Shown here piece after piece: positions 1-28,434 of a DNA stretch of 34,846 bases. Numbering within the stretch: the stretch's first letter is position 1; each line of letters starts with the position of its first letter. Below the pieces are notes generated by a model. The model saw only the letters and a program-made list of their open reading frames with translations, did not search any database and was not told the origin of the DNA. Origin of the DNA: Octopus bimaculoides (taxonomy: Eukaryota); the NCBI RefSeq assembly GCF_001194135.2, contig NC_069003.1:5906545-5941390 (forward strand). Direction: 5' to 3'. The position numbers and the translations under genes were made by a program.

Positions 1-3000
1 CTACGAACGAAATAACGAACGAAAGAACGAACGAATGAACGTACGTACGTAAGAACGAAAGAAAGAACGAACGACCGGAACCAAGGACGAACGTACGTAC
101 GTACCTCCGAACGAACGAACGAAGAACAAAAGAACGAGCGAAGAACTTACGAACGAACGAACGAAAGAATGAACGAAATAACGAACGAAAGAACGAAAGT
201 TCTTACGTAAGAACGATCGAACGAACGAACGAACGAACAAGCGAAACGAACGAACGTCCGTACCTACGTAAGAACGTACGAACGTAAGTACGAACGAAAG
301 AACGAACGAACGAGCTCACAAAAGAACGTACGAACGAACGAATGTAAGTACGTACGAACGAACGAACGTACGATCGAATGAACGAACGTACGTACTTACG
401 TAATTACGTACGTACGAACGATCGAACGAAGGAACGTACCTTGTGTCCGTACGTACAAACGAACGAACGAACGAACGAACCTGCGTACGTACGTAGAAAC
501 GTACGAACGTACATAAGTATGAACTTACGAATAAAAGAACGATCGAAAGAACGAGCTCAGATACGTACGTACGTACGGAAGAACGAACGGACGACCGAAC
601 GTAAGAACGTACGAACGAACGAAAGTAAGTACGAACGAAATAACGAACGAACGAAAGAACGAAAGTTCGTAAGTAAGAACGATCGAGCCAACAAACCAAC
701 GAACGTACGTACGTTTAGACGGACGAAAGAACGAACGAACGTACGTACGTACGTGCGAATGAACGGAAGAAAGAATGAACGAACGTACGTAAGTACGAAC
801 GAATGAACGATCGAACGAACGAACTCAAATACGTACGTACGTACGAACGAACAAACGAACGAAANNNNNNNNNNNNNNNNNNNNNNNNNNNNNNNNNNNN
901 NNNNNNNNNNNNNNNNNNNNNNNNNNNNNNNNNNNNNNNNNNNNNNNNNNNNNNNNNNNNNNNNNNNNNNNNNNNNNNNNNNNNNNNNNNNNNNNNNNNN
1001 NNNNNNNNNNNNNNNNNNNNNNNNNNNNNNNNNNNNNNNNNNNNNNNNNNNNNNNNNNNNNNNNNNNNNNNNNNNNNNNNNNNNNNNNNNNNNNNNNNNN
1101 NNNNNNNNNNNNNNNNNNNNNNNNNNNNNNNNNNNNNNNNNNNNNNNNNNNNNNNNNNNNNNNNNNNNNNNNNNNNNNNNNNNNNNNNNNNNNNNNNNNN
1201 NNNNNNNNNNNNNNNNNNNNNNNNNNNNNNNNNNNNNNNNNNNNNNNNNNNNNNNNNNNNNNNNNNNNNNNNNNNNNNNNNNNNNNNNNNNNNNNNNNNN
1301 NNNNNNNNNNNNNNNNNNNNNNNNNNNNNNNNNNNNNNNNNNNNNNNNNNNNNNNNNNNNNNNNNNNNNNNNNNNNNNNNNNNNNNNNNNNNNNNNNNNN
1401 NNNNNNNAAGTACGAACTTACGAACGAAAGCATGAACAAAAGAACGTACGTATGTACGAACGACCGAACGAACCTGCGTGCGTACGTACAAACGAACGAA
1501 CGAACGTACGTACGTACGTGCGAATGAACGGAAGAAAGAATGAACGAACGTACGTAAGTACGAACGAATGAACGATCGAACGAACGAACTCAAATACGTA
1601 CGTACGTACGAACGAACAAACGAACGAAAGAACGGACGACCGAACGTCAAAATGTACGAACGAACGAATGAACGAGTGTACAAAAGAACGAACGCACGAG
1701 CGTACAAACGAACGAATGAACGAACGTACGTACGTACGCACGAATGAACAAACGAACGAATGAACGTACGTACGTAAGAATGAAAGAAAGAACGAACGAA
1801 CGACCGAAACCAAGGACGAACGTACGTACGTACGAACGAACGAACGAACGTACATACGTATGTACGAACGACCGAACGAACCTGCGTACGTACGTACAGA
1901 CGAACGAACGAATGTACGTATGTACGAACGAACGGACGAACGAATGAACGATCGTACGTAAGTACGAACTTATGAACGATCGAACGAACGAACTCAAATA
2001 CGTACGAACGAACAAGCGAACGAACGAACGGACGGCCGAACGTAAGAATGTACGAACGAACGAACGAACTAACGAACAAAAGAACGAACGCACGAGCGTA
2101 CAAACTAACGAACGAACAAACGAACGTAAGTGCGTAAGAACGAACGTACGTACGTAAACACGAATGAACGAACGAACGAACACATGAACGTACGTACGTC
2201 AGAACGAAAGAAAGAACGAACGAACGATCGAAACCAAGGACGAACATACGTACGTACGTACGAACGAACGATCGAACGTACGTACGTACGTATGTACGAA
2301 CGACCGAACGAGCCTGCGTACGTACGTATAAACGAACGAACAAATATACGTACGTACGTACGAACGAATGTACGTACGAACGAACGAATGAACGAACGTA
2401 CGTAAGTACGAACTTATGAACGATTGAACGAACGAACTCAAATATGTANNNNNNNNNNNNNNNNNNNNNNNNNNNNNNNNNNNNNNNNNNNNNNNNNNNN
2501 NNNNNNNNNNNNNNNNNNNNNNNNNNNNNNNNNNNNNNNNNNNNNNNNNNNNNNNNNNNNNNNNNNNNNNNNNNNNNNNNNNNNNNNNNNNNNNNNNNNN
2601 NNNNNNNNNNNNNNNNNNNNNNNNNNNNNNNNNNNNNNNNNNNNNNNNNNNNNNNNNNNNNNNNNNNNNNNNNNNNNNNNNNNNNNNNNNNNNNNNNNNN
2701 NNNNNNNNNNNNNNNNNNNNNNNNNNNNNNNNNNNNNNNNNNNNNNNNNNNNNNNNNNNNNNNNNNNNNNNNNNNNNNNNNNNNNNNNNNNNNNNNNNNN
2801 NNNNNNNNNNNNNNNNNNNNNNNNNNNNNNNNNNNNNNNNNNNNNNNNNNNNNNNNNNNNNNNNNNNNNNNNNNNNNNNNNNNNNNNNNNNNNNNNNNNN
2901 NNNNNNNNNNNNNNNNNNNNNNNNNNNNNNNNNNNNNNNNNNNNNNNNNNNNNNNNNAATTACGTACGTACGAACGATCGAACGAAGGAACGTACCTTGT

Positions 3001-6000
3001 GTCCGTACGTACAAACGAACGAACCTGCGTACGTACGTACAAACGAACGTACGTACGTACGAACGAACGTACATAAGTACGAACTTACGAATAAATGAAT
3101 GATCGAATGAACGAACTCAGATACGTAAGTACGTACGAAAGAACGAACGGACGACCGAACGTAAGAACGTACGAACGAACGAAAGTAAGTACGAACGAAA
3201 TAACGAACGAAAGAACGAACGAACGAAAGTTCGTAAGTAAGAACGATCGAGCGAACAAACCAACGAACGTACGTACGTTTGGACGGACGAAAGAACGAAC
3301 GAACGTACGTCTATTTGTCCATACGTACGAATGAACTTAGGAACAAACGAACGAACGTACGTACATACAAACGAACGAACGAACTTACGTACGTACGTAC
3401 AAAGGGGCGAACGAACGAAATGAACAAATGAATGAACGACCTAACGAACGAAAGACCAAACACACGAATGTACGAAAGAACGAATGAATGAAGGAACGTA
3501 CGCACGAACGACCGAACGTACGTATTTATGGAAGTACGAACGATCGAACGTACCTTATGTCCGTGCGTAAGAACGAACGAACGTAAGTGCGTACGAACGA
3601 CCGAACGAAAGTGCGTACGTACGTACAAACGAACGAATGAATGTACGTACGTACGTACGAACAAACGAACGAATGAACGTACATACGTACGTGCAAACGA
3701 ACGGATGAACGAATGAACGATCAAACGAACGAACTCAGATACGTACCTACGTACGAACGTAAGAACGTACGAACGAATTAACGAACATAAGTACGAAGGA
3801 ACGAACGAGCGAGCGCATAAAAGAGCGTACGAACGCAAAAAAACTTACGTACGAACGATCGAACGAAGAAACGTATCTTGTGTTCGTACGTACAAACGAA
3901 CGAACGAACGAACGAAAAAACGAACGAATGGACGAACAAACAAACGAACGTAGTACGTACGTACGAACGAACCTGCGTACGTACGTACAAACGAACGAAC
4001 CTGCGTACGTACGTACAAACGAACGGACGAACGACTGAACGAATGTACGTAAGTACGAACTTACGAACGAAAGCACGAACAAAAGAACGTACGTACGTAT
4101 GTACGAACGACCGAACGAACCTGCGTGCGTACGTACAAACGAACGAACGTACGTACGTACGTGCGAATGAACGGAAGAAAGAATGAACGAACGTACGTAA
4201 GTACGAACGAGTGAACGATCGAACGAACGAACTCAAATACGTACGCACGAGCGTACAAACGAACGAACGAACGTACGTACACACGAATGAACGAACGAAC
4301 GAATGAACGTACGTACGTAAGAACGAAAGAACGAACGAGTGTACAAAAGAAAGAACGCACGAGCGTACAAACGAACGAACGAACGTAAGTACGTACGAAC
4401 GAACGTACGTACGTTAACACGAATGAACGAACGAACGAACGAATGAACGTACGTACGTCAGAACGAAAGAAAGAACGAACGAACGAACGAAAGAAACCAA
4501 GGACGGACATACGTACGTACGTACGAACGAACGATGGAACATACGTACGTACGTATGTACGAACGACCGAACGAGCCTGCGTACGTACGTACAAACGAAC
4601 GAACTAATATACGTACGTACGAACGAATGTACGTACGAACGAACGGACGAACGAATGAACGTACGTACGTAAGTACGAACTTATGAACGATTGAACGAAC
4701 GAACTCAAATACGTTCTTACGTACGAACGAAGAAACGAACGGACGACCGAACGTAAGAATGTACGAACGAACGAACGAACGAATGAACGTACGTACGTAA
4801 GAACGAAAGAAAGAACGAACGAACGAACGATCGAAACCAAGGACGAACGTACGTACGTACGTCCGAACGAACGAACGAAGAACAAAAGAACGAACGAAGA
4901 ACTTACGAACGAACGAACGAAAGAATGAACGAAATAACGAACGAAAGAACGAAAGTTCTTACGTAAGAACGATCGAATCGAACGAACGTCCGTACCTACG
5001 TAAGAACGTACGAACGAATTAACGAATGTAAGTACGAACGAAATAACGAACGAACGAGCTCACAAAAGAACGTACGAACGAACGAATGATCGAACGAATG
5101 TAAGTACGTACGAACGAACGAACGAACGATCGAATGAACGAACGTACGTACTTACGTAATTACGTACGTACGAACGATCGAACGAAGGAACGTACCTTGT
5201 GTCCGTACCTACAAACGAACGAACGAACGAACCTGCGTACCTACGTACAAACGAACGTACGTACGTACGAACGAACGTACATAAGTACGAACTTACGAAT
5301 AAATGAACGATCGAATGAACGAACTCAGAGACGTACGTACGTACGAAAGAACGAACGGACGACCGAACGTAAGAACGTACGTACGAATGAACGTACGTAC
5401 ATACAAACGAACGAACGAATGTACGTACGTATGTACGAACGAATGAACGAATGTACGTACAAACCAACGTACGAACGAACGAACGAACAAATGAACGAAA
5501 GCACGAACAAAAGAACGTACGAACGATCGAACGAACCTGCGTGCGTCCGTACAAACGAACGAACGAATGTACGTACGTACGTGCGAATGAACGATCGAAC
5601 GAACGAACTCAAATACGTACGTATGTATAAACGAACGAACGTATGAATGTACGAACGAACGAACGTAAGTACGAACGAACTAACGAACGAATGAACGAGT
5701 GTACAAAAGAACGAACGAACGAATGAACGTAAGTACGTACGAACGTACATACGCACGAATGAACGAACAAACGAACGAATGAACGTACGTACGTACGAAC
5801 GAACGAACGTACGTATGTACGAACGACCGAACGAACCTGCGTGCGTACGTACAAACGAACGAACGAATGTACGTACGTACGAACGAACGGACGAACGAAT
5901 GAACGATCGAACGAATGAACTAACGAACGAATGAACGACTGTACAAAAGAACGAAAGCACGAGCGTACAAACGAACGAACAAACGAAAGTACGTACGAAC

Positions 6001-6126
6001 GAACGAACGTACGTACGTACGCACGAATGAACGAACGAATGAACGTACGTACGTCCGAACGAAGAACAAACAAACGAACGAAGAACGAACGAATGAACAA
6101 ACTTACGAACGAACGAAAGAACGTAC
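1..6126 (+). repeat. Satellite block 1 (AACG-rich strand on +)
   Basis: A-rich tetramers, with landmarks read in the forward orientation up to ...GAAAGAACGTAC at 6126. Confidence 0.95.
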
Positions 6127-9100
6127 TTACTTTCGTTCGTTCGTACGTTCTTACGTTCGGTCGTCCGTTCGTTCTTCCGTACGTACGTACGTATCTGAGT
6201 TCGTTCTTTCGATCGTTCATTTATTCGTAAGTTCGTACTTATGTACGTTCGTTCGTACGTACGTTCGTTTGTACGTACGTACGCAGGTTCGTTCGTTCGT
6301 TTGTACGTACGGAAACAAGGTACGTTCCTTCGTTCGATCGTTCGTACGTACGTAATTACATAAGTACGTACGTTCGTTCGTTCATTCGATCGTTCGTTCG
6401 ATCGTTCGTACGTACCTACATTCGTTCGTTCGTACTTTCTTTTGTGAGCTCGTTCGTTCGTTCTTTCGTTCGTACTTCCGTTCGTTAATTCGTTCGTACG
6501 TTCTTACGTAGGTACGGACGTCCGTTCGTCCTTTGTTCGTTCGTTCGTTCGTTCGATCGTTCTTACATAAGAACTTTCGTTCTTTCGTTCGTTATTTCGT
6601 TCATTCTTTCGTTCGTTCGTTCGTAAGTTCTTCGTTCGTTCGTTCGGTCGTTCGGACGTACGTACGTACGTTCGTCCTTGGTTTCGGTCGTTCGTTCGTT
6701 CTTTCTTTCGTTCTTACGTACGTACGTTCGTTCGTTCGTTCGTTCGTTCATTCGTGCGTACGTACGTTCCTTCGTTCGTACGTACTTACGTTCGTTCATT
6801 CGTTCGTACATTCTTACGTTCGGTCGTTCGTTCGTTCGTACCTAATTACGTATTTGAGTTCATTCGTTCGATCGTTCATAAGTTCGTACTTACGTACGTT
6901 CGTTCATTCGTTNNNNNNNNNNNNNNNNNNNNNNNNNNNNNNNNNNNNNNNNNNNNNNNNNNNNNNNNNNNNNNNNNNNNNNNNNNNNNNNNNNNNNNNN
7001 NNNNNNNNNNNNGTACGTACGTTCCTTCGTTCGTACGTACTTACGTTCGTTCATTCGTTCGTGCATTCTTACGTTCGGTCGTTCGATCTTTCATAAGTTC
7101 GTACTTACGTACGTTCGTTCATTCGTTTGTCCGTTCGTTCGTACGTACATTCGTTCGTACGTACGCATATTCGTTCGTTCGTTTGTACGTACGTACGCAG
7201 GCTCGTTCGGTCGTTCGTACATACGTACGAACGTACGTTCGATCGTTCGTTCGTACGTATGTTCGTCCTTGGTTTCGATCGTTCGTTCGTTCTTTCGTTA
7301 TTTCGTTCATTCTTTCGTTCGTTCGTAAGTTTGTTCATTCGTTCGTTTTTTGTTCGTTCGTTCGTTCTTCGTTCGTTTGTTTGTTCTTCGTTCGGACGTA
7401 CGTACGTTCATTCGTGCGTACGTTCGTTCGTACTTTCGTTCGTTTGTACGCTCGTGCGTTCGTTCATTTGTACAGTCGTTCATTCGTTCGTTCGTATATT
7501 CTTACGTTCGGCCGTCCGTTCGTACGTACTATTTGAGTTCATTCGTTCGATCGTTCATTCGTTCGTAAATTCGTACTTACGTACGTTCGTTGATTCGTTC
7601 GTCCGTACGTACGTACATTTTTTCGTTCGTTTGTACGTACGCACGCACGCAGGTTCGTTCGGTTGTTCGTACATACGTACGTACGTTCGTCTTTGGTTTC
7701 GGTCGTTCGTTCGATCTTTCTTTCGTTCTTACGTACGTACGTTCATTCGTTCGTTCATTCGTGCGTACGTCTTTACGTTCATTCGTTCGTTCGTTCTATT
7801 GTACACTCGTTCATTCGTACATTCTTACGTTCGTTCGTTTGTTTCTTCGTTCGTACGTACGTATTTGAGTTCGTACGTACGTATTTGAGTTCGTTCGTTC
7901 GATCGTTCATTCGCACGTACGTACGTACATTCGTTCGTTCGTTTGTACGGACGCACGCAGGTTCGTTCGGTCGTTCGTACGTTCTTTTGTANNNNNNNNN
8001 NNNNNNNNNNNNNNNNNNNNNNNNNNNNNNNNNNNNNNNNNNNNNNNNNNNNNNNNNNNNNNACGTACGTACGTTCGTCTTTGGTTTCGGTCGTTCGTTC
8101 GATCTTTCTTTCGTTCTTACGTACGTACGTTCATTCGTTCGTTCATTCGTGCGTACGTCTTTACGTTCATTCGTTCGTTCGTTCTATTGTACACTCGTTC
8201 ATTCGTTCGTTCGTACATTCTTACGTTCGTTCGTTTGTTTCTTCGTTCGTACGTACGTATTTGAGTTCGTACGTACGTATTTGAGTTCGTTCGTTCGATC
8301 GTTCATTCGCACGTACGTACGTACATTCGTTCGTTCGTTTGTACGGACGCACGCAGGTTCGTTCGGTCGTTCGTACGTTCTTTTGTACGTACGTTCGTTC
8401 ATTCGTTCGTACGTACGTACATTCGTTCGTTTGTATGTACGTACGCAGGTTCGTTCGTACGTTCGTTCGTCCGTTCGTTCGTACGTACGTAGGTACGTAT
8501 TTGAGTTCGTTCGTTCGATCGTTCATAAGTTCGTACTTACGTCCGTTCGTTCATTTGTTCGTTTGCACTGTCGTACGCAGGTTCGATCGTTCGTAATACG
8601 GACGTACGTTCGTTCGTACGCTCTTTCGCTCGTTCGTTGTTTGTACGTACGGACATAAGGCACGTTCCTTCGTTCGTACGTACGTACTTACGTAAGTACT
8701 TACGTACGTTCGCTACTTCGTACGTCCGTCCGTACGTTCGTTTGTACATACGTACGTACGTTCATTCGTTCGTACGTACATTCATTCGTTCGTTTGTACG
8801 TACGTACGCACTTTCGTTCGGTCGTTCGTACGCACTTACGTTCGTTCGTTCTTACGCACGGACATATGGTACGTTCGATCGTTCGTACTTACATAAATAC
8901 GTACGTTCGGTCGTTCGTGCGTACGTTCGTTCATTCATTCGTTCTTTCGTACATTCGTTTGTTTGGTCTTTCGTTCGTTCGGTCGTTCATTCATTTGTTC
9001 ATTTCGTTCGTTCGCCCCTTTGTACGTNNNNNNNNNNNNNNNNNNNNNNNNNNNNNNNNNNNNNNNNNNNNNNNNNNNNNNNNNNNNNNNNNNNNNNNNN

Positions 9101-12100
9101 NNNNNNNNNNNNNNNNNNNNNNNNNNNNNNNNNNNNNNNNNNNNNNNNNNNNNNNNNNNNNNNNNNNNNNNNNNNNNNNNNNNNNNNNNNNNNNNNNNNN
9201 NNNNNNNNNNNNNNNNNNNNNNNNNNNNNNNNNNNNNNNNNNNNNNNNNNNNNNNNNNNNNNNNNNNNNNNNNNNNNNNNNNNNNNNNNNNNNNNNNNNN
9301 NNNNNNNCGTACTTAATTACGTAAGTACGTACGTTCGTTCGTTCATTCGATCGTTCGTTCGTACGTACTTACATTCGTTCGATCATTCGTTCGTTCGTAC
9401 TTTCTTTTGTGAGCTCGTTCGTTCGTACTTACGTTCGTTAATTCGTTCGTACGTTCTTACGTAGGTACGGACGTTCGTTCGTTTCGCTCGTTCGATCGTT
9501 CTTACGTAAAAACTTTCGTTCTTTCGTTCGTTATTTCGTTCATTTGTTCTTCGTTTGTTCGTTCGGACGTACGTACGTAGTTCGTCCTTGGTTTCGGTGG
9601 TTCGTTCGTTCTTTCTTTCGTTCTTACGTACGTACGTTCGTTCGTTCGTACGTACTTACGTTTGTTCGTTCATTTGTACGCTCGTGCGTTCGTTCTTTTG
9701 TACAGTCGTTCATTCGTTCGTTCTTTCGTTCGTTAGTTCGTTCGTACTTACGGTCGTTCGTTCGTTCGTACATTCTTACGTTCGGTCGTCCGTTCGTTTG
9801 TTCGTTCGTACGTACGTATTTGAGTTCGTTCGTTCAATCGTTCATAAGTTCGTACTTACGTACGTTCGTTCATTCGTACGTACGTATGTTCGTTCGTTCG
9901 TTTGCACGTACGTACGCAGGCTCGTTCGGTCGTTCGTACATACGTACGTACGTTCGATCGTTCGTTCGTACGTACGTATGTTCGTCCTTGGTTTCGATCG
10001 TTCGTTCGTTCTTTCTTTCGTTCTGACGTACGTACGTTCATTCGTGTTTACGTACGTACGTTCGTACGTACTTACGTTCGTTCGTTTGTACGCTCGTGTG
10101 TTCGTTCTTTTGTACACTCGTTCGTTCTTTCGTTCGTTAGTTCGTTCGTACATTCTTACGTTCGACCGTCCGTTCATTCGTTCGTACGTATTTGAGTTCG
10201 TTCGTTCGATCGTTCGTAAGTTCGTACTTACGTACGTTCGTTCATTCGTTCGTTCGTACGTACATTCGTTCGTTCGTCTGTACGTACGTACGCAGGTTCG
10301 TTCGGTCGTTCGTACATACGTACGTTCGTTCTTTCGTTCTTACGTACGTACATTCATTCGTTCGTTCGTGCGTACGTTCGTTTGTACGCTCGTGCGTTCG
10401 TTGTTTTGTACACTCGTTCGTTCTTTCGTACATTTTTACGTTCGGTCGTCCGTTCGTTCGTACGTATTTGAGTTCGTTCGTTCGTACTTACGTACGTTCG
10501 TTCATTCTTTCTTCCGTTCATTCGCACGTACGTACGTACGTTCGTTCGTTTGTACGTACGCACGCAGGTTCGTTCGGTCGTTCGTACATACGTACGTACG
10601 TTCTTTTGTTCGTGCTTCCGTTCGTAAGTTCGTACTTACGTACGTTCGTTCATTCGTCCGTCCGTTCGTTTGTTCGTCCATTCGTTCGTTCGTTCGTTCG
10701 TTCGTTTGTACGTTCGGACACAAGATACGTTTCTTCGTTCGATCGTTCGTACGTACTTACGTAAGTACGTTTGTTCGGTCGTTCGTTCGTTTGTACGTAA
10801 GTTTTTTTGCGATCGTACGCTCTTTTATGCGCTCGTTCGTTCGTTCCTTCGTACTTACGTTCGTTAATTCGTTCGTACGTTCGTACGTATCTGAGTTCGT
10901 TCGTTTGATCGTTCATTCGTTCGTCCGTTCGTTTGGACGTACGTTCATTCGTTCGTTCGTACGTACGTTCATTCGTTCGTACGTACGTACGCACTTTCGT
11001 TCGGTCGTTCGTACGCACTTACGTTCGTTCGTTCTTACGCACGGACATAAGGTACGTTCGATCGTTCGTACTTACATAAATACGTACGTTAGATCGTTCG
11101 TTCATTCATTCTTTCTTTCGTACATTCGTTTGTTTGGTCTTTCGTTCGTTCGGTCGTTCATTCATTTGTTCATTTCGTTCGTTCGCCCCTTTGTACGTAC
11201 GTACGTAAGTTAGTTCATTCGTTTGTATGTACGTACGTTCGTTCGTTCCTAAGTTCATTCGTACGTATGGACAAATGTACGTACGTTCGTTCGTTCTTTC
11301 GTCCGTCCAAACGTACGTACGTTCGTTGGTTTGTTCGTTCGATCGTTCTTACTTACGAACTTTCGTTCGTTCGTTATTTCGTTCGTACTTACTTTCGTTC
11401 GTTCGTACGTTCTTACGTTCGGTCGTCCGTTCGTTCTTTCGTACGTACGTACGTATCTGAGTTCGTTCATTCGATCGTTCATTTATTCGTAACTTCGTAC
11501 TTATGTACGTTCGTTCGTACGTACGTACGTTCGTTTGTACGTACGTACGCAGGTTCGTTCGTTCGTTTGTACGTACGGACACAAGGTACGTTCCTTCNNN
11601 NNNNNNNNNNNNNNNNNNNNNNNNNNNNNNNNNNNNNNNNNNNNNNNNNNNNNNNNNNNNNNNNNNNNNNNNNNNNNNNNNNNNNNNNNNNNNNNNNNNN
11701 NNNNNNNNNNNNNNNNNNNNNNNNNNNNNNNNNNNNNNNNNNNNNNNNNNNNNNNNNNNNNNNNNTCGCTCGTTCGTTCGTAAGTTCTTCGTTCGCTCTT
11801 TTGTTCTTCGTTCGTTCGTTCGGTCGTTCGTACGTACGTTCGTCCTTGGTTTCGGTCGTTCGTTCTTTCTTTCGTTCTTACGTACGTACGTTCATTCGTT
11901 CGTTCATTCGTGAGTACGTACGTTCCTTCGTTCGTACGTACTTACGTTCGTTCATTCGTTCGTACATTCTTACGTTCGGTCGTTCGTTCGTTTGTTCGTT
12001 CGTACGTAATTGAGTTCATTCGTTCGATCGTTCATAAGTTCGTACTTACGTACATTCATTCGTTCGTCCGTTCGTTCGTACGTACATTCGTTCGTACGGA

Positions 12101-12769
12101 CGTATATACGTTCGTTCGTTTGTACGTACGTACGCAGGCTCGTTCGGTCGTTCGTACATACGTACGAACGTACGTTCGATCGTTCGTTCGTACGTACGTA
12201 TGTTCGTCCTTGGTTTCGATCGTTCGTTCGTTCTTTCGTTCATTCTTTCGTTCGTTCGTAAGTTTGTTCATTGGTTCGTTCGTTCGTTCTTCGTTCGTTT
12301 GTTTGTTCTTCTTTCGGACGTACGTACGTTCATTCGTGCGTACGTACGTACGTTCGTACTTTCGTTCGTTCGTTCGTTTGTACGCTCGTGCGTTCGTTCT
12401 TTTGTACAGTCGTTCATTCGTTCGTTCGTATATTCTTAGGTTCGGCCGTCCGTTCGTTCGTTCGTTTGTTCGTTCGTACGTACGCACGCAGGTTCGTTCG
12501 GTCGTTCGTACATTCGATCGTTCGTACGTACGTTCGTCTTTGGTTTCGGTCGTTCGTTCGATCTTTCTTTCGTTCTTACGTAGTACCTTCATTCGTTCGT
12601 TTGTTCGTTCATTCGTGCGTACGTACGTTCGTACGTACTTACGTTCATTCGTTCGTTTGTACGCTCGTGCGTTCGTTCTTTTGTACACTCGTTCATTCGT
12701 TCGTTCTTTCGTTCGTACTTACGTTCGTTCGTACTTACGTTCGTTCGTACATTCTTACGTTCGTTCGTT
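6127..12769 (-). repeat. Satellite block 2, inverted (CGTT-rich on +)
   Basis: Abrupt switch to T-rich tetramers. Landmarks appear as reverse complements (TTTTGTGAGCTC near 6446 and 9411, CGCCCCTTTG near 9013 and 11184, ACAAGGTACGTTCC near 6316 and 11581). Both junctions lie inside contiguous, N-free sequence. Confidence 0.95.
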
Positions 12770-15700
12770 CGTACGAAATAACGAACGAAAGAACGAAAGT
12801 TCTTACGTAAGAACGATCGAACGTACAAACGAACGAACGAACCTGCGTACGTACGTACAAACGAACGTACGTACGTACGAACGAACGTACATAAGTACGA
12901 ACTTACGAATAAATGAACGAACGAACGAACGAAAGAACGAACGAACGTACGTACATTTGTCCATACGTACGAATGAACTTAGCAACAAACGAACGAACGT
13001 ACATACAAACGAACGAACGAACGTAAGTGCGTACGAACGACCGAACGAAAGTGCGTACGTACGTACAAACGAACGAATGAACGTACGTACGTATGTACAA
13101 ACGAACGAACGATCGAACGAAAGAACGAATTAACGAACGTAAGTACGAAGGAAGGAACGAACGAACGATTGAACGAACGAGGGCATAAAAGAGCGTACGA
13201 CCGCAAAAAACGTCCGTACAAACGAACGAATGAACGTAAGTACCTACGAACGTACGTGCAAACGTACGAAGGAACGAACGACAGAACAAACGTATCTTGT
13301 GTCCGTACGTACAAACGAACGAACGAACGAATGGACGAACAAACGAACGAACGAACGAACCTGCGTACGTACATACAAACTAACGAATGTACGTACGTAC
13401 GAACGAATGAACGAACGTACGTACGTATGTACAAACGAACGAACGATCGAACGAAAGAACGAACGTACGTACGTACGGACGGACGAAGTAGCGAACGTAC
13501 GTAAGTACTTACGTAAGTACGTACGTACGAACGATCGAACGAAGGAACGAAGGAACGTACCTCATGTCCGTACGTACAAACAACGAACGAACGAGCAAAC
13601 GAACGAGGGCATAAAAGAGCGAAAGACCGCAAAAGACGTTCGTACAAACGAACGAATGAACTTAAGTACCTACGAACGTACGTGCAAACGTACGAAGGAA
13701 CGAACGACCGAACAAACGTACGTACGTACTTATGCAAGTACGTACGAACGAACGATCGTACGAAGGAACGTTTCTTGTGTCCGTACGTACAAACGAACGA
13801 ACGAACGAATGGACGAACAAACGAACGTAGTACATATGTACATATGTACGAACGAACCTGCGTACGTACATACAAACGAACGAACTAATGTACGTACGTA
13901 CGTACGAACGAACGTACGTACAAACGAACGTACGAACGAACGAACAAATGAACGAAAGCACGAACAAAAGAACGTACGAACGACCGAACGAACCTGCGTG
14001 CGTCCGTGCAAACGAACGAACGAACGTACGTATGTACGTGCGAATGAACGATCGAACGAACGAACTCAAATACGTACGTACGTACGAACGAACAAACGAA
14101 CGAACAAACGAACGAAGGAACGTAAGAATGTACGAAAGAACGAACGTAAGTACGTACGAACTAACGAACGAAAGAACGAACGAATGAATGAGTGTACAAA
14201 AGAACGAACGCACCAGCGTACAAACGAACGAACAAACGAACGAACGGACGGCCGAACATAAGAATATATGAACGAACGAACAAACGAACTATCGAACGAA
14301 TGAACGACTGTACAAAAGAACGAACGCACGAGCGTACAAACGAACGATCGAAAGTTCGTACGAACGAACGAACGTACGTACGTACGCACGAATGAACGTA
14401 CGTACGCACGAATGAACGTACGTACGTCCGAACGAAGAACAAAAGAACGAACGAAGAACTTACGAACGAACTAACGAAAGAATGAACGAAATAACGAACG
14501 AACGAAAGAACGAAAGTTCTTACGTAAGAACGATCGAACGAACGAACGAACGAACGAGCGAAACGAACGAACGAACAAAGGACGAACGAACGAACGTCCG
14601 TACCTACGTAAGAACGTACGAACGAATTAACGAACGTAAGTACGAACGAAAGAACGAGCTCACAAAAGAACGTACGAACGAACGAATGAACGAACGAATG
14701 TAAGTACGTACGAAAGATCGAATGAACGAACGAACGTACGTACTTACGTACGTACGAACGATCGAACGAAGGAACGTACCTTGTGTCCGTACGTACAAAC
14801 GAACGAAAGAACGAAAGTTCGTAAGTAAGAACGATCGAACGAACAAACCAACGAACGTACGTACGTTTGGACGGAAGAAATAACGAACGAACGTACGTAC
14901 ATACAAACGAACGAACGAACGAACTTACGTACGTACAAAGGGGCGAACGAACGAAATGAACAAATGAATGAACGACCGAACGAACGAAAGACCAAACGAA
15001 CGAATGTACGAAAGAACGAACGAAAGAACGAATGAATGAACGAACGTACGCACGAACGACCTAACGTACGTATTTATGTAAGTACGAACGATCGAACGTA
15101 CCTTATGTCCGTGCGTAAGAACGANNNNNNNNNNTAAGTACGAACGATCGAACGTACCTTATGTCCGTGCGTAAGAACGAACGAACGTAAGTGCGTACGA
15201 ACGACCGAACGAAAGTGCGTACGTACGTACAAACGAACGGATGAATGTACGTACGTACGAACGAATGAACGTTCGTACGTGCAAACGAGCGGACGTACGA
15301 ATGAACGATCAAACGAACGAACTCAGATACGTACCTACGTACGAACGTACGAACGAATTAACGAACGTAAGTACGAAGGAACGAACGAACGAGCGCATAA
15401 AAGAGCGTACGAACGCAAAAAACTTACGTACAAACGAACGAACGACCGAACAAACGTACTTACGTAAGTACGTACGAACGATCGAACGAAGAAACGTATC
15501 TTGTGTCCGTACGNNNNNNNNNNNNNNNNNNNNNNNNNNNNNNNNNNNNNNNNNNNNNNNNNNNNNNNNNNNNNNNNNNNNNNNNNNNNNNNNNNNNNNN
15601 NNNNNNNNNNNNNNNNNNNNNNNNNNNNNNNNNNNNNNNNNNNNNNNNNNNNNNNNNNNNNNNNNNNNNNNNNNNNNNNNNNNNNNNNNNNNNNNNNNNN

Positions 15701-18700
15701 NNNNNNNNNNNNNCAAACGAACGTAGTACGTATGTACGAACGACCAAACGAACGAACGACCAAACGAACGAACCTGCGTACGTACGTACAAACGAACGGA
15801 CGAACGAACGTACGTAAGTACGAACTTACGAACGAAAGCACGAACAAAAGAACGTACGTACGTATGTACGAACGACCGAACGAACCTGCGTGCGTACGTA
15901 CAAACGAACGAACGAACGTACGTACGTGCGAATGAACGGAAGAAAGAATGAACGAACGTACGTAAGTACGAACGAATGAACGATCGAACGAACGAACTCA
16001 AATACGTACGTACGAACGAACAAACGAACGAACGAACGAACGGACGACCGAACGTAAAAATGTACGAAAGTAGGAACGAATGAACGAGTGTACAAAAGAA
16101 CGAACGCACGAGCGTACAAACGAACGGACGAACGAACGTACGTACGCACGAATGAACGAACGAATGAACGTACGTACGTAAGAAGGAAAGAAAGAACGAA
16201 CGAACGACCGAAACCAAGGACGAACGTACGTACGTACGAACGAACGTACGTACGTGTGTACGAACGACCGAACGAACCTCGGTACGTACGTACAGACGAA
16301 CGAACGAATGTACGTACGTACGAACGAACGGCCGAACGTAAAAATGTACGAACGAACGAACGAACTAACGAACGAACGAGTGTACAAAAGAACGAACGCA
16401 CGAGCGTACAAACGAACGTAAGAACGAACGTACGTACGTAAACACGAATGAACGAACGAACGAACGAATGAACGTACGTACGTCAGAACGAAAGAAAGAA
16501 CGAACGATCGAAATCAAGGACGAACATACGTACGTACGTACGAACGAACGATCGAACGTACGTACGTACGTATGTACGAACGACCGAACGAGCCTCCGTA
16601 CGTACGTACAAACGAACGAACGAATATACGTACGTATGTACGAACGAATGTACGTACGAACGAACGGACGAACGAATGAACGAACGTACGTAAGTACGAA
16701 CTTATGAACGATTGAACGAACGAACTCGAATACGTACTTACGTACGAACGAACAAACGAACGGACGACCGAACGTAAGAATGTACGAACGAACGAACGAC
16801 CGTAAGTACGAACGAACTAACGAACGAAAGAACGAACGAATGAACGACTGTACAAAAGAACGAACGCACGAGCGTACAAAAGAACGAACGAACGAATGAA
16901 CGAACGAACGTAAGTACGTACGAACGAACGTACGCACGAATGAACGTACGTACGTAAGAACGAAAGAAAGAACGAACGAACGAAACCAAGGACGAACGTT
17001 CGTACGTACGAAGAACAAAAGAACGAACGAAAGAACGAACGAACGAATTAACGAACGTAAGTACGAACGAACGAGCTCACAAAAGAACGTACGAACGAAT
17101 GAATGAACGAACGAATGTAAGTACGTACGAACGAACGAACGAACGATCGAATGAACGAACGAACGTACGTACGTAATTACGTACGTACGAACGATCGAAC
17201 GAAGGAACGTACCTTGTGTCCGTACGTACAATCGAACGAACGAACCTGCGTACGTACGTACAAACGAACGTACGTACGAACGAACGTACATAAATGAACG
17301 ATCGAATGAACGAACGGACGACCGAACGTAAGAACGTACGAACGAACGAAAGTAAGTACGAACGAAATAACGAACGAAAGAACGAACGTACGTACGTTTG
17401 GACGGACGAAAGAACGAACGAACGTACGTACATTTGTCCATACGTACGAATGAACTTAGGAACAAACGAACGAATGAACGATCGAACGAACGAACTCAAA
17501 TACGTACCTACGTACGTACGAACGAACGTAAGAAAGTACGAACGAATTAACGAACGTAAGTACGAAGGAACGAACGAACGAACGAGGGCATAAAAGAGCG
17601 TACGAACGCAAAAAACGTCCGTACAAACGAACGAATGAACGTAAGTACCTACGAACGTACGTGCAAACGTACGAAGGAACGAACGACCGAAGAAACGTAC
17701 GTACGTACTTATGCAAGCACGTACGTACTTATGCAAGTACGTACGTACGAACGATCGAACGAAGGAACGTATCTTGTGTCCGTACGTACGAACGATCGAA
17801 CGAATGGACGAACAAACGAACGTAGTACATATGTACGAACGACCAAACGAACGAACGAACGAACCTGCTTACGTACATACAAACGAACGAACGAATGTAC
17901 GTACGTACGAACGAATGAACGAACGTACGTACAAACGAACGTACGAACGAACGAAAAAATGAACGAAAGCACGAACAAAAGAACGTACGAACGACCGAAC
18001 GAACCTGCGTGCGTCCGTACAAACGAACGAACGAATGTACGTACGTGCGAACGAACTTACGAACGAATGAACGATCGAACGAACGAACTCAAATACGTAC
18101 GTACGTATGAACGAACGAACGAACGAATGAACGAGTGTACAGAAGAACGAACGCACGAGCGTACAAACGAACGAACGAATGAACGTAAGTACGTACGAAT
18201 GTACGTACGCACGAATGAACGAACAAACGAACGAATGAACGTACGTACGTAAGAAAGATCGAACGGACGACCGCAACCAAAGACGAACGTACGTACGAAC
18301 GATCGAACGAACGTACGTACGTATGTACGAACGACCGAACGAACCCGCGTGCGTACGTACAAAAGAACGAATGTACGTACGTACCAACGAACGAATCAAC
18401 GAACGTACGTAAGTACGAATTTACGAACGAATGAACGATCGAACGAATGAACTCAAATAGTACGTACGTACAAACGAACGAACGAACGGACGGCCGAACA
18501 TAAGAATATACGAACGAACGAACAAACGAACGAATGAACGACTGTACAAAAGAACGAACGCACGAGCGTACAAACGAACGAACGTAAGTACGTACGAACG
18601 AACGAACGTACGTACGTATGCACGAATTAACGAACGAATGAACGTACGTACGTCCGAACGAAGAACGAACGAATGAACAAACGAACGAACGAACGAAAGA

Positions 18701-20042
18701 ATGAACGAAAGAACGAACCAAAGAACGAAAGTTCGTACGTAAGAACGATAGAACGAACGAGCGAAACGAACGAATGAAGGTACGAAAGAACGTACGTACG
18801 TACGTAAGTACAAACGAACGAAGATACGTACCTACGTACGTACGAACCATCGAACGAGCGATCGAACGAACGAAAGAACGAACGAACGAACGAACGAACG
18901 TGGGTACGAACGAACGAAAGTACGAACGAACGTAAGTACGAACGAACGAACGAGCGTACAAAAGAACGAACGAAGGAATAAAACGTACGTACAAACGAAC
19001 GAATGAACGAACGAACGTAAGTACGTACGAACGAACGAACAAACGAACGAACGAACGAACGTACGTTCGTACTTACGTAAGTACGTACGTACGAACGATC
19101 GAACGTACCTTATGTCCGTACGTACAAACGAACGAAAGAACGAACAAACGAACGAACGAACGAACAAACGAACGAAAGAGCGAACAAACTATCGAACGAA
19201 CGTAATTTCGTATGTACGAACGATCGAACCTTCGTACGTACGTACAAACGAACGAACGAACGAACGAAGGAACCTAAGTACGTACGAACGAACGAACGAG
19301 TGTACAAAAGAACGAACGCACGAGCGTACAAACGAACGAACGTAAGTACGTACGTATGTACGTAGACACGAAATATCGAACGAACGTACGTACGTCCGAA
19401 CGACCGAACGAACGAAGAACAAACGAAGAACGAACGAACTTACGAACGAATGAACAAACGAACGAACGAAAGAATGAACGAAATAACGAACGAAAGTTCG
19501 TACGTAAGAACGATCGAACGAACGAACGAGCGAAACGAACGTCCGTACCTACGTTCGTAAGAACGAACGAACGAACGTACGTACGTTCGGACGGACGGAC
19601 GATAGAACGAACGAACGAACGTACGTACATAAGTCCATAAGTGCGAACAAACGAACGAACGAACGAACGTACGTACATACAAACGAACTTACGTACGTAT
19701 GTACAAACGAGCGAACGAACGAAATGAACGAATGAATGAAACAACGAACGAACGAAAGGACGAACGTACGTCTGGACGCAGGAACGAACGTACGTACGTA
19801 CGAACGAAATAACGAACGTTCGAAGGTAAGAACGATCGAACGAACGAACGTTCGTACGTAACAACGATCGAACGAACGAGCGAAATTCCCTACGTACATA
19901 CGAACGAACGTACGTCCATACGTACGAACGAACGAACGTACGTAGATGCGTACGGATGGATGAAAAACGAACGAACGTACGTCTATACGTACGAACGAAC
20001 GAACGTACGTACGTACATGCGTACGGATGGATGAAAGAACGA
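12770..20042 (+). repeat. Satellite block 3 (AACG-rich strand on +), degenerating toward its right end
   Basis: Orientation flips back at the palindrome TTCGTACGAA (12768-12777). Landmarks become sparse and diverged after about 18700. The block ends at a 100-N gap (20043-20142). Confidence 0.95.
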
Positions 20043-20469
20043 NNNNNNNNNNNNNNNNNNNNNNNNNNNNNNNNNNNNNNNNNNNNNNNNNNNNNNNNNN
20101 NNNNNNNNNNNNNNNNNNNNNNNNNNNNNNNNNNNNNNNNNNGCGCTTCTTTTTGTTTTGTTTTTTTGTCCTAAATATGGTACAAATCTTGTTCAGTTGT
20201 CTGGGCATCCCTAGTCCAACTGCCAGAAGTGGCCCAGGCAGCTGACATTATGGAAAATAGAAGAGCCATAGACTGACCAGCGAAGCTGGAATCCCTGAGC
20301 TGAGAGACTGCAGTGGAGGTTGTGGTGAGGAGTGTGGGAGGGACAAGAGATGGAGAGATGAGATGTACTTCAGAATGTGTCCCTGGCCTTGGTTACAAGG
20401 AAGTTTAGATTAGTACTAAAGGGGATTTTGAATCGCTTGGTGCATTGTGGACATGGGTCAACGTAACTT

Positions 20470-20625
20470 TTTTACTCTTTTATTTGTTTCAATCATTTGA
20501 CTGCAGCCATGCTGGAGCACACCTTTAGTCAAACAAATCAACCCCAGGACTTATTCTTTGTAAACCTAGTANNNNNNNNNNTGGTTGGTAAGCAAGCTAC
20601 TTACCACACAGCCACTCCTGCACCT
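20470..20625 (-). mobile_element. tRNA-derived SINE, type A (3' body plus 5' head, middle collapsed at a 10-N gap)
   Basis: The reverse complement of 20582-20625 is AGGTGCAGGAGTGGCTGTGTGGTAAGTAGCTTGCTTACCAACCA (A-box-like TGGCTGTGTGG). 20470-20571 matches the 3' body of the copy at 28476-28797. Confidence 0.85.
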
Positions 20626-20633
20626 AATTATAA

Positions 20634-20838
20634 TAGTTTCAAATCTTAGCAAAAGGCCATTCAGTGGAGAGTGGAGTAGTCAGTTACCTTGACCCCAGTA
20701 CTTGACTGGTAATTAACTTGACAGTAATCAATACTAAAGGGATGAACAACAAAGTCGACCTCAGTGGAATTTGAACCCTGGAAGAAATTCTAAGCATTCT
20801 GTCCAATGTGCTAATGCTCCTACCATCTCACCAACTTC
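20634..20838 (-). mobile_element. tRNA-derived SINE with Deu/Nin-like domain (type N), diverged
   Basis: Contains TTGACCCCAGTACTTGACTGGTA...AAAGTCGACCTCAGTGGAATTTGAAC, homologous in reverse to 21934-22127 and to the copies at 32671-33500. The Deu/Nin assignment is from recalled consensus. Confidence 0.75.
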
Positions 20839-20847
20839 AAGTAACAA

Positions 20848-20913
20848 ATAATAATAATTCTTTTTAATTTTGGCACAAGGACAGCAATTTTGAGAGGAGG
20901 GGCAAGTTGATTA
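20848..20913 (-). mobile_element. 3' end of a second type-N SINE directly abutting the previous copy
   Basis: AATAATAAT tail followed by TTTTGGCACAAGGACAGCAATTTTGAGAGGAGGGG, the reverse complement of the type-N 3' end. Cut by (CT)n and a gap. Confidence 0.65.
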
Positions 20914-20937
20914 CTCTCTCTCTCTCTCTCTCTCTCT
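20914..20937. repeat. (CT)12 microsatellite
   Basis: Direct reading. Confidence 0.95.
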
Positions 20938-21932
20938 AGCCAGATAACCATGTACCTCCTCTCTANNNNNNNNNNNNNNNNNNNNNNNNNNNNNNNNNNN
21001 NNNNNNNNNNNNNNNNNNNNNNNNNNNNNNNNNNNNNNNNNNNNNNNNNNNNNNNNNNNNNNNNNNNNNNNNNNNNNNNNNNNNNNNNNNNNNNNNNNNN
21101 NNNNNNNNNNNNNNNNNNNNNNNNNNNNNNNNNNNNNNNNNNNNNNNNNNNNNNNNNNNNNNNNNNNNNNNNNNNNNNNNNNNNNNNNNNNNNNNNNNNN
21201 NNNNNNNNNNNNNNNNNNNNNNNNNNNNNNNNNNNNNNNNNNNNNNNNNNNNNNNNNNNNNNNNNNNNNNNNNNNNNNNNNNNNNNNNNNNNNNNNNNNN
21301 NNNNNNNNNNNNNNNNNNNNNNNNNNNNNNNNNNNNNNNNNNNNNNNNNNNNNNNNNNNNNNNNNNNNNNNNNNNNNNNNNNNNNNNNNNNNNNNNNNNN
21401 NNNNNNNNNNNNNNNNNNNNNNNNNNNNNNNNNNNNNNNNNNNNNNNNNNNNNNNNNNNNNNNNNNNNNNNNNNNNNNNNNNNNNNNNNNNNNNNNNNNN
21501 NNNNNNNNNNNNNNNNNNNNNNNNNNNNNNNNNNNNNNNNNNNNNNNNNNNNNNNNNNNNNNNNNNNNNNNNNNNNNNNNNNNNNNNNNNNNNNNNNNNN
21601 NNNNNNNNNNNNNNNNNNNNNNNNNNNNNNNNNNNNNNNNNNNNNNNNNNNNNNNNNNNNNNNNNNNNNNNNNNNNNNNNNNNNNNNNNNNNNNNNNNNN
21701 NNNNNNNNNNNNNNNNNNNNNNNNNNNNNNNNNNNNNNNNNNNNNNNNNNNNNNNNNNNNNNNNNNNNNNNNNNNNNNNNNNNNNNNNNNNAGTAGTATC
21801 AGCTGTTCTTATAGAACACCCATGTTTAGGTGGCAATAAACATTACTTCTCAATATAAATACTGCTTACATCTCTAATCGAAATTTCCTTAACGAGCTAG
21901 CTTTCTACTTTTATTTTAATTATATTTCTAAT

Positions 21933-22127: not shown

Positions 22128-22159
22128 AAAGGTTTTGGTGGAATTCAGTAAATTAGATA

Positions 22160-22468: not shown

Positions 22469-22486
22469 ACACACACACACACACAA

Positions 22487-24134: not shown

Positions 24135-24150
24135 ACATATATATATATAA

Positions 24151-24556: not shown

Positions 24557-24661
24557 ATAAATTGGCATTTCATCAATATCGTCGCCATCTTTCTGTTTAC
24601 TCCCATCCAAACTTTATATAATGTGGGGGTAGGCATGTATCTTCTCTTTAGCAAGAACACC

Positions 24662-26729: not shown

Positions 26730-26779
26730 ACATATGGGTTCAGTATCAGTTTTTTACAGTTAGTCAATTTGGTTAAGTT

Positions 26780-28431: not shown

Positions 28432-28434
<3 letters not shown>

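What the first reader, a model, noticed from the sequence alone, without database searches (positions are those of the whole stretch)
2958..5400. A 'simple' tetranucleotide array hides a three-tier higher-order repeat (4 bp, about 0.5-0.6 kb x4, about 2.2 kb)
Seen: in N-free sequence the landmark GGAACGTACCTTGTGTCCG recurs at 2987 and 5187, 2200 bp apart. The sub-landmark GAACTCA(A/G)A occurs at 3113, 3731, 4229, 4701 and 5321, spacings 618, 498, 472 and 620. Diverged relatives of the main landmark (ACCTTATGTCCG, TATCTTGTGTTCG, ATTTGTCCATAC) sit within one unit. The same cyclic landmark order is read backwards in 9307-11597 and forwards in 14430-17600, with periods of about 2.2-2.4 kb across gaps. 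Inference: a microsatellite has evolved into a complex satellite with a tetrameric HOR, an architecture associated with centromeric/pericentromeric or subtelomeric satellites in other animals. I know of no description of this family.
Basis: partly seen in the sequence, partly recalled or inferred. Interest (0 to 1): 0.72.

Follow-up and report, generated by a model that had tools for sequence, protein, structure and literature searches.

The report
Microsatellite-derived satellite with 2.2-kb unit
A 20-kb block of decayed four-base repeats (AACG/TACG) carries a real but irregular repeat unit of about 2 kb, which is an ordinary way for satellite DNA to evolve, and here it is seen only in a gappy draft assembly, probably of an octopus.

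Summary
Window 1-20042 is one degenerate (ACGA/ACGT)n array, about 70% pure. It lies in three orientation blocks and runs off the left edge.

A long unit is superimposed on the array. 78% of the rest of the array aligns to unit 2987-5186 at a mean 87.8% identity. The order of segments is cyclically conserved more often than chance (21 of 47 junctions; null 6.4). Three diagnostic variants of the main landmark (a, b, c) recur in the same order in at least four units. So the hierarchy is real.

It is not a regular tetrameric higher-order repeat (HOR):
- Sub-repeat spacing ranges from 220 to 660 bp.
- One 0.8-kb part of the unit is over-represented 2-4 fold.
- Unit length ranges from about 1.9 to 2.4 kb.
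- Copies are only 80-98% alike.
- Only one full period lies in N-free sequence.
- Several gaps are flanked by overlapping contig ends.

A centromeric or subtelomeric location cannot be tested here, and the window holds no telomere repeats. The closest analogues are human satellites 2 and 3, which are pentamer-derived with 1.8-3.6 kb units. I rate it a new member of a known kind, of modest interest.

The parts
1..20042 (.). Whole degenerate (ACGA/ACGT)n array. It runs off the left edge of the window and ends at a 100-N gap.
   Evidence: TRF finds period 4 at 68-72% matches. CpG o/e is 3.3. 95% of CpG-to-CpG spacings are 4, 8 or 12 bp and the longest CpG-free stretch is 24 bp.
1..6130 (+). Orientation block 1 (AACG on the + strand)
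   Evidence: Strand-specific tetramer counts; TRF consensus units.
6131..12775 (-). Orientation block 2 (CGTT on the + strand). Both switch points lie inside contigs, not at gaps.
   Evidence: Fold-back z-scores at the junctions are -7.1 and -5.7.
12776..20042 (+). Orientation block 3 (AACG on the + strand)
2987..5186 (+). Reference long unit (2200 bp). This is the only complete period in N-free sequence.
   Evidence: Landmark a at 2987 and at 5187. Used as the mapping target.
5187..5400 (+). Start of the next unit. It stays collinear for 214 bp at 92%, then the partner switches.
9308..11594 (-). Nearly complete unit read backwards (landmarks a 11594, b 11060, c 10733)
   Evidence: 10779-11594 maps to 3866-2987 at 89.4%, and so on down to 9308-9544 mapping to 5168-4924..
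14771..17203 (+). Unit of 2433 bp that includes 210 N (landmarks a 14771, b 15093/15149, c 15491)
17204..19099 (+). Shorter unit of about 1.9 kb in N-free sequence (a 17204, c 17764). A landmark-like core follows at 19100.
15..746 (+). End of one unit (15-430) followed by the start of the next (landmark a at 431)
   Evidence: 88% and 91% to 4763-5186 and 2987-3310; alignment A1.
2987..3005 (+). Main landmark, type a. Type b is at 3545-3563 and type c at about 3867-3886 in the same unit.
   Evidence: a common core of about 80 bp with type-specific flanks that are conserved between units.
3113..3121 (+). Sub-landmark GAACTCAGA. Further copies are at 3731 (G), 4229 (A), 4701 (A) and 5321 (G).
   Evidence: about 120 bp of shared context. 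The G,G,A,A variant order recurs in the reversed unit (11456, 10890, 10467, 10191).
4615..5400 (+). Left arm of a large inverted repeat. The right arm is 6123-6903.
   Evidence: 83.5% over 808 bp. Both arms end at reference coordinate about 3192.
6123..6903 (-). Right arm of the inverted repeat
1408..2448 (+). Local tandem amplification of the sub-repeat (period 408-444 bp, about 2.5 copies, 83%)
   Evidence: It maps to reference 4075-4877, the part that is over-represented.
7675..8387 (.). Probable assembly artefact: the 317 bp before the 71-N gap and the 325 bp after it are 97.5% identical.
   Evidence: This duplication produces the 380-388 bp peak in the k-mer offsets.
20143..34846 (.). Flank: AT-rich and CpG-depleted, with LINE fragments, SINE-like copies and dinucleotide microsatellites.

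Best explanation
This is non-coding satellite DNA that grew out of a tetranucleotide microsatellite by nested duplication.

Shown:
- The base layer is a mix of ACGA and ACGT units, about 70% pure.
- Every landmark is a small mutation of that lattice. There is no foreign insert anywhere in the array.
- Short mutated cores (about 80 bp around CCTTGTGTCCG, about 120 bp around GAACTCARA) occur several times per unit, as paralogues with their own diagnostic changes.
- A unit of about 1.9-2.4 kb that carries those paralogues in a fixed order recurs at least five times, in both orientations, at 80-98% identity.
- Indels between copies are multiples of 4 bp in 89% of cases.

Inferred mechanism:
1. Replication slippage made and keeps resizing the 4-bp lattice.
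2. Point mutations marked it.
3. Unequal exchange or segmental tandem duplication copied first blocks of 0.3-0.6 kb and later blocks of about 2 kb. Continuing gain and loss of sub-repeats makes the units unequal.
4. At least two inversions or inverted duplications then joined the blocks head to head.

I infer no sequence-specific cellular function. The most likely state is neutral, heterochromatin-type repeat DNA in an octopod genome.
For: - Periodicity and purity.
- Long-range homology far above block-shuffle nulls.
- Cyclic mapping to unit 2987-5186 covers 12.4 of 15.9 kb at a mean 87.8% identity. 21 of 47 junctions are collinear, against a null mean of 6.4 and a maximum of 16 in 2000 trials.
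- Multi-copy alignment with shared markers that are not tetranucleotide.
- The a-b-c landmark order recurs in units on different contigs.
- G/A sub-landmark pattern.
- 259 of 292 indels are multiples of 4, and A<->T is the commonest mismatch.
- No CpG-free stretch longer than 24 bp.
- No Rfam family.
- No real protein homologues of the open frames.
- The only named relatives of the flank's LINE fragments are Octopus proteins.
Against: - Only one complete period lies in N-free sequence. The next copy breaks off after 214 bp.
- Within the longest contig (15714-20042) the 2.1-2.5 kb self-match is only 74%, against a background of about 71%.
- Neighbouring units are no more alike than distant ones. 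This fits an old array without local homogenisation, but it also fits a mosaic assembled from a much larger family.
- Five of the nine gaps within or bounding the array (and seven of the window's 13) are flanked by overlapping or duplicated contig ends.
- Copy number, chromosomal position, methylation and transcription are all unknown.
Confidence: 0.7

Rival explanations
1. Assembly mosaic. The repeat family and its landmarks are real. The local arrangement in this window (unit length, order of pieces, the two strand switches, the inverted repeat) is largely produced by a short-read assembler and scaffolder stitching reads from many genomic copies.
For: - There are 13 N gaps.
- Contig ends overlap across gaps 7992-8062 (97.5% over about 320 bp), 15125-15134 (46 bp exact), 865-1407 (136 bp exact), 6913-7012 (73 bp, 98.6%) and 22863-22872 (170 bp exact).
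- More than half of adjacent segments are not collinear.
- Patches of 97-98% identity sit inside copies that are otherwise 85-90% alike.
- Identity does not depend on distance.
Against: - The same a-b-c order, with similar spacings (558/322, 534/327, 322/342), appears on separate contigs that differ by about 10%.
- The strand switches lie inside contigs, at palindromes of only 4-10 bp. That is too short to mislead a k-mer assembler.
- The inverted arms are 83-94% alike, not identical.
Confidence: 0.25
2. One reading: a regular three-tier HOR satellite (4 bp; four monomers of 0.5-0.6 kb; 2.2 kb) of the centromeric, pericentromeric or subtelomeric kind.
For: - There are four sub-landmarks per reference unit, spaced 618, 498, 472 and 620 bp.
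- The nested paralogue structure is real.
- k-mer offsets cluster at 2160-2220 and at 4400 bp.
- There is roughly one SacI site per unit.
Against: - Sub-landmark spacing over the whole array is 220-660 bp, plus two 20-bp doublets.
- The four pieces are weakly similar.
- Parts of the unit are unequally represented.
- Unit identity averages 87.8%, not the 95% or more of classic HORs.
- There are no telomere repeats.
- Nothing in the window bears on chromosomal location.
Confidence: 0.1
3. A plain decayed microsatellite. On this reading the long-range matches are low-complexity coincidence.
For: The background gapped identity between any two in-phase stretches is already about 70-72%.
Against: - Block shuffles that keep local motifs give no match of 300 bp or more, against 111 in the real array.
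- Landmarks with three or more departures from the lattice recur 18-30 times, against 0-0.7 expected.
Confidence: 0.01
4. A coding repeat. On this reading the long stop-free frames in the CGTT orientation (up to 567 codons, FVRS/YVRT repeats) encode a repetitive protein.
For: - The frame 9510-11210 is longer than in all 800 block shuffles.
- All 19 stop triplets in that span fall in the other two frames.
Against: - That strand is intrinsically poor in stop codons.
- The stop triplets are not independent, because they were copied along with the repeats.
- The test is post hoc, over 9 contigs and 2 strands.
- The array changes strand twice.
- Indels of 4 bp between copies would shift the frame.
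- The only database hits are translated (TTCR)n microsatellites inside unrelated proteins.
- There are no Pfam hits for window ORFs.
Confidence: 0.02
5. A tandem array carried inside, or generated by, a transposable element, as in Helitron- or other TE-borne satellites of molluscs.
For: The flank is rich in transposable elements.
Against: - No part of the 16.5 kb of sequenced array departs from the tetranucleotide lattice for more than 24 bp.
- No element termini or coding remnants are present.
- The array is at least 20 kb long.
Confidence: 0.03

Closest known systems
Human satellites 2 and 3 (HSat2/HSat3), including the 1.77-kb chr1 HSat2 unit and the 3.6-kb DYZ1 unit on the Y (PMC4022460)
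   Same: Both are arrays descended from a simple short motif (CATTC there, AACG/TACG here) that is still recognisable throughout. Both carry a superimposed repeat unit of 1.8-3.6 kb, defined by the order of diverged motif variants.
   Different: - The motif is unrelated and there is no sequence homology.
- The human arrays are megabase-sized, pericentromeric, and have subfamily-specific, well homogenised units. Here only about 20 kb of draft sequence is seen, the units are 80-98% alike, and their lengths are unequal.
- This array is saturated with CpG, about one every 5.5 bp.
Alpha-satellite-type higher-order repeats
   Same: Paralogous sub-repeats inside a unit are each closest to their positional counterparts in other units.
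   Different: There is no fixed monomer length, no near-identical units, and no long regular head-to-tail run. Centromere association is untested.
Crustacean satellites: the hermit-crab (TAGG)n satellite and the roughly 2.1-kb complex G+C-rich satellite of the land crab Gecarcinus lateralis (from my own knowledge, not checked here)
   Same: They include a tetranucleotide-based satellite, and a complex satellite unit of about 2 kb with internal simple-sequence domains, in marine invertebrates.
   Different: The motifs and the phylum differ. I could not retrieve these sequences or papers with the tools, so this is a lead only.
Unequal-crossover model for the growth of periodicities in repeated DNA (Smith 1976; Southern's derivation of satellites from short ancestral repeats; my own knowledge)
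   Same: The model predicts exactly this picture: short-period repeats that acquire longer superimposed periods, with slippage continuing at the short period.
   Different: It is a model, not a family. It predicts no particular motif or location.

Membership tests
Higher-order repeat (HOR) satellite in the strict, alpha-satellite sense | Head-to-tail monomers of nearly constant length | tested here: not met
   Sub-landmark spacings in N-free sequence are 220-660 bp, plus two 20-bp doublets. Main-landmark paralogues are spaced 558, 322 and 1320 bp within the reference unit.
Higher-order repeat (HOR) satellite in the strict, alpha-satellite sense | Monomers within a unit differ from one another, but each matches its positional counterpart in other units | tested here: met
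   Types a, b and c keep type-specific flanks and the same order in at least four units. The G,G,A,A sub-landmark order recurs. Counterparts are 85-98% alike, whereas paralogues are near background.
Higher-order repeat (HOR) satellite in the strict, alpha-satellite sense | Units repeated in tandem with very high identity between units (typically 95% or more) | tested here: not met
   Mean identity is 87.8% (range 80-98%). 21 of 47 junctions are collinear. Only one full period is N-free.
Simple-sequence-derived complex satellite (HSat2/3-like architecture) | The ancestral short motif still dominates the whole array | tested here: met
   TRF finds period 4 at 68-72% matches over 1-20013. 95% of CpG spacings are 4, 8 or 12 bp.
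Simple-sequence-derived complex satellite (HSat2/3-like architecture) | A kilobase-scale unit defined by the order of motif variants | tested here: met
Simple-sequence-derived complex satellite (HSat2/3-like architecture) | High copy number in long arrays (satellite abundance) | not testable with these tools
   The array is at least 20 kb and runs off the window. No reads or whole genome are available. The landmark 19- and 20-mers have no exact match in the metagenome, viral or prokaryote collections.
Centromeric or pericentromeric satellite | Location at the primary constriction, with CenH3 or H3K9me3 association | not testable with these tools
   No chromosomal or chromatin data are available.
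Subtelomeric satellite | Adjacent to telomere repeats | tested here: not met
   There are no (TTAGGG)n, (TTAGG)n or (TTAGGC)n runs in the window. The window covers only one side of the array.
Protein-coding tandem-repeat gene | An open frame with homologues or domain matches and a consistent strand | tested here: not met
   Long stop-free frames exist. However, the array changes strand twice, the hits are only translated microsatellites, and there is no Pfam match.

The most novel reading that the evidence does not exclude
This could be a sample of a major (peri)centromeric or otherwise chromosome-specific satellite of an octopod. It would be built entirely from a CpG-containing, partly palindromic tetranucleotide (about one CpG per 5.5 bp over at least 20 kb, in a genome region whose flank has CpG o/e 0.32). 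It would be kept free of transposon insertions and of CpG decay by rapid turnover or by escape from germline methylation. That would make it the first described cephalopod satellite with a nested higher-order unit.
Probability: 0.1. Interest if true: 0.6.

Novelty: new member of a known kind. Interest (0 to 1): 0.3.

Why it matters
If long reads confirm it, this is a clean example of a microsatellite caught at every stage of turning into a complex satellite: 4 bp, then sub-repeats of 0.3-0.6 kb, then a unit of about 2 kb, with slippage still acting. It comes from a group (cephalopods) for which I found no described satellite families.

Its extreme CpG density next to strongly CpG-depleted flanks makes it a convenient natural probe of germline methylation and of repeat turnover.

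As it stands it is one locus in a gappy draft assembly. Its main practical value is as a warning that this scaffold region is unreliable.

Tried and rejected
- Ungapped autocorrelation over 2958-6120 was uninformative, because frequent 4-bp indels destroy the register.
- Soft-scored self-BLAST is swamped by the 70-72% background, so stringent scoring was needed.
- The strongest k-mer offset peak (380-388 bp) turned out to be a duplicated contig end across the 71-N gap, not a biological period.
- Rfam found no family.
- Pfam on five flank ORFs found nothing.
- An exact-product look-up of a window ORF found nothing.
- The contigs encoding two anonymous ENA relatives gave no organism.
- Exact-pattern scans of metagenome (twice), viral and prokaryote contigs gave 0 hits.
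- Literature searches for an AACG/ACGT satellite, for the repeat strings, and for an octopus or cephalopod satellite found no description.
- The mutation spectrum does not give a clean CpG-decay signature. C>T and G>A make up 216 of 583 single-change tetramers, but C>A is as common as C>T, and the counts are inflated by duplication. I rejected it as evidence about methylation.
- The coding reading of the long open frame is rejected as unlikely.
Full report
**What the window is.** The window is a scaffolded draft assembly with 13 runs of N. Positions 1-20042 are a single degenerate tetranucleotide array. TRF reports period 4 with consensus ACGA/AACG/CGTT at 68-72% matches. The array reads AACG on the + strand in 1-6130, CGTT in 6131-12775, and AACG again in 12776-20042. 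It runs off the left edge and ends at a 100-N gap, so the true junction with the flank is not sequenced. The remaining 14.7 kb is AT-rich and CpG-depleted, and is full of dinucleotide microsatellites.

The 19-mer GGAACGTACCTTGTGTCCG is at 431, 2987, 5187, 14771 and 17204 (+) and at 11576-11594 (-). With up to two mismatches there are 18 sites, against 0 expected. GAACTCA(A/G)A is at 3113, 3731, 4229, 4701 and 5321 exactly as stated, and also at 5605. There are 29 copies in the array, against 0.68 expected for the whole window. The three 'diverged relatives' are at 3552, 3874 and 3313.

A dinucleotide shuffle is a weak null for a microsatellite, so I also shuffled the array in blocks of 4-64 bp. 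The real array has 111 self-matches of at least 300 bp (longest 887 bp, 89.4% identity, 1076 bits). The shuffles give 0-2. An alignment of seven copies of the roughly 450 bp around the main landmark shows shared markers that are not tetranucleotide: GAGCTCACAAAAG, GTAATTACG, CCTTGTGTCCG, CCTGCGT, ACTTACGAATAAATG and GAACTCAGA. The copies are separated by indels of 4, 8 or 12 bp and longer multiples.

**The long unit.** I took 2987-5186 as a reference unit and mapped the rest of the array onto it with stringent scoring. 12.4 of 15.9 kb aligns, at a length-weighted 87.8% identity. The mapping runs cyclically:
- 15-430 is the end of a unit and 431-746 is the start of the next.
- 11594 back to 9308 is a nearly full unit in reverse.
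- 14771-17203 is a full unit (2433 bp, including 210 N).
- 17204 to about 19100 is a shorter unit (about 1.9 kb, N-free).

Of 47 adjacent segment pairs in N-free sequence, 21 continue the cyclic order within 150 bp. The null mean is 6.4 and the maximum in 2000 trials is 16. k-mer offsets also cluster at 2160-2220 and at 4400 bp.

**The middle tier.** The four pieces cut at the sub-landmark are only weakly alike (z = 1.2-5.2 against 48-bp block shuffles). Their spacing over the whole array is 220-660 bp. Nevertheless a hierarchy exists. The main landmark comes in three diagnostic types:
- a: GGAACGTACCTTGTGTCCG
- b: CGAACGTACCTTATGTCCG
- c: GAAACGTATCTTGTGTCCG

The three types share a core of about 80 bp, and each has its own flanks. 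They recur in the order a-b-c in 2987/3545/3867, in 11594/11060/10733 (reverse) and in 14771/15093/15491. Partial series occur at 13552/13765 and at 17204/-/17764. The sub-landmark carries about 120 bp of shared context. Its G,G,A,A variant order also recurs.

So paralogues inside a unit are older than the duplication of the unit, which is the logic of a higher-order repeat. The structure is nonetheless irregular. Reference coordinates 4087-4886 are represented 7-11 times, against 2.6-6 times for the rest. That part is locally amplified with a period of 408-444 bp in 1408-2448.

**Process.** Between homologous copies, 259 of 292 indels are multiples of 4 bp. The commonest mismatch is A<->T, which is the ACGA/ACGT switch. 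Slippage on the 4-bp lattice therefore continued after the large duplications.

No stretch of the sequenced array goes more than 24 bp without a CpG, and 95% of CpG spacings are 4, 8 or 12 bp. Every landmark is thus a local mutation of the lattice, and there is no transposon insert.

The two strand switches lie inside contigs, at short palindromes (GTAC at about 6128; TTCGTACGAA at about 12772). As expected for head-to-head arrays, the junctions fold back strongly (z -7.1 and -5.7, against -1.9 inside the array). A large inverted repeat (4615-5400 against 6903-6123, 83.5%) has both arms ending at the same reference coordinate, about 3192. This suggests an inverted duplication.

**Reliability.** Several gaps are flanked by overlapping contig ends:
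- 7675-7991 against 8063-8387 (97.5%)
- 46 bp exact at 15125-15134
- 136 bp exact at 865-1407
- 73 bp at 6913-7012
- 170 bp exact at 22863-22872

The strongest raw k-mer offset, about 380 bp, comes from the first of these. Only one whole period (2987 to 5187) is N-free, and the next copy stays collinear for just 214 bp. Neighbouring units are no more alike than distant ones. The unit is supported by independent contigs that differ by about 10%. The exact arrangement, however, could be partly an assembly mosaic.

**Other readings.**
- Rfam finds nothing.
- In the CGTT orientation there are long stop-free frames, up to 567 codons at 9510-11210 and longer than in 800 block shuffles. However, the stop triplets are not independent, the array changes strand, 4-bp indels would shift the frame, and the only database matches are translated (TTCR)n microsatellites inside unrelated proteins. 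I treat the frame as a by-product of composition and duplication.
- There are no telomere repeats.

**Source and surroundings.** The flank holds two inverted LINE tail fragments, at about 23340-24400 (-) and at 26065-26439 (+). It also holds several SINE-like copies (24420-24500, 27524-27604, 28497-28624). A conceptual translation of the LINE fragment finds reverse-transcriptase and PHD-domain proteins. All hits that carry an organism name are from Octopus vulgaris or O. bimaculoides (51-81% identity over 20-55% of the query). From memory the SINE-like elements also look octopod. The source is therefore probably an octopus, but this is not proven.

**Comparison with what is known.** The closest known architecture is human satellites 2 and 3. 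They descend from the pentamer CATTC and have a 1.77-kb unit on chromosome 1 and the 3.6-kb DYZ1 unit on the Y (PMC4022460). The resemblance is in how the array works, not in homology.

The array fails two of three sequence criteria for a strict HOR (constant monomer length, near-identical units) and meets one (positional paralogues). It meets the two testable criteria for a simple-sequence-derived complex satellite. Its abundance and location could not be tested.

I found no description of this family and no exact landmark match in the metagenome, viral or prokaryote collections. No eukaryote genome collection was available for the comparison.

**Verdict.** The 'tetrameric HOR' label is too regular, and the centromere or subtelomere idea is untested. 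This is a new member of a known kind of repeat, of modest interest. It needs long reads before anything more can be claimed.

Noticed in passing
window 1-20042 versus 20143-34846: The array has CpG o/e 3.3 (about 3020 CpGs, one per 5.5 bp). The flank has CpG o/e 0.32. The array also has no transposon insert, although the flank is packed with them. This could mean rapid turnover or escape from germline methylation.
   Followed up: partly
window 9510-11210 (+); also 11784-13130 (+), 6503-5327 (-), 2448-1408 (-): There are very long stop-free frames in the array, up to 567 codons. The longest exceeds all 800 block shuffles, and all 19 stop triplets in its span fall in the other two frames. The translation is a low-complexity FVRS/YVRT repeat. 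It is probably a by-product of composition and duplication.
   Followed up: partly
window gaps 865-1407, 6913-7012, 7992-8062, 15125-15134, 22863-22872, 31168-31930: The sequence on the two sides of these N gaps overlaps or is duplicated (for example 170 bp exact at 22693-22862 = 22873-23042, and 317/325 bp at 97.5% around 7992-8062). The gaps are probably spurious and the duplications are assembly artefacts.
   Followed up: yes
window 23340-24400 (-) and 26065-26439 (+): Two degenerate LINE 3' fragments lie in inverted orientation (RT/PHD-type relatives). The only named database relatives are Octopus vulgaris and O. bimaculoides proteins, which points to an octopod source.
   Followed up: partly
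window 24420-24500, 27524-27604, 28497-28624 (inverted); also 20470-20571: There are several copies of a short dispersed SINE-like element containing ...GAAGACACTTGCCCAAGGTGCC.... From memory it resembles an abundant octopus repeat. This was not verified with the tools.
   Followed up: no
window 6122-6135 and 12766-12782: The array changes strand inside contigs, at short palindromes (GTAC; TTCGTACGAA). The self-complementary ACGT/CGTACG units of this repeat may themselves promote fold-back and inverted duplication.
   Followed up: partly
window 19900-20042 and 18373-18539: There are local tandem duplications of 67 bp (2.1 copies, 92%) at the very edge of the array, and of 87 bp (1.9 copies, 82%) inside it. 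The 67-bp unit contains a motif (ATGCGTACGGATGGATGAAAGA) that I did not notice elsewhere in the array.
   Followed up: no
window 32945-33014, 33180-33249, 20710-20779: A dispersed flank element ends in ...GGAATTTGAACTCA. The single GAACTCAGA outside the array (33243) lies in it. The resemblance to the array's sub-landmark is probably coincidental.
   Followed up: no
proteins P0004-P0007: Predicted proteins from other eukaryotes (for example a sea anemone, Actinostola sp.) contain SFVRSF/SFIHSF runs that are translated (TTCG/TTCA)n microsatellites. Related tetranucleotide arrays are therefore read through by gene predictors in other genomes.
   Followed up: no
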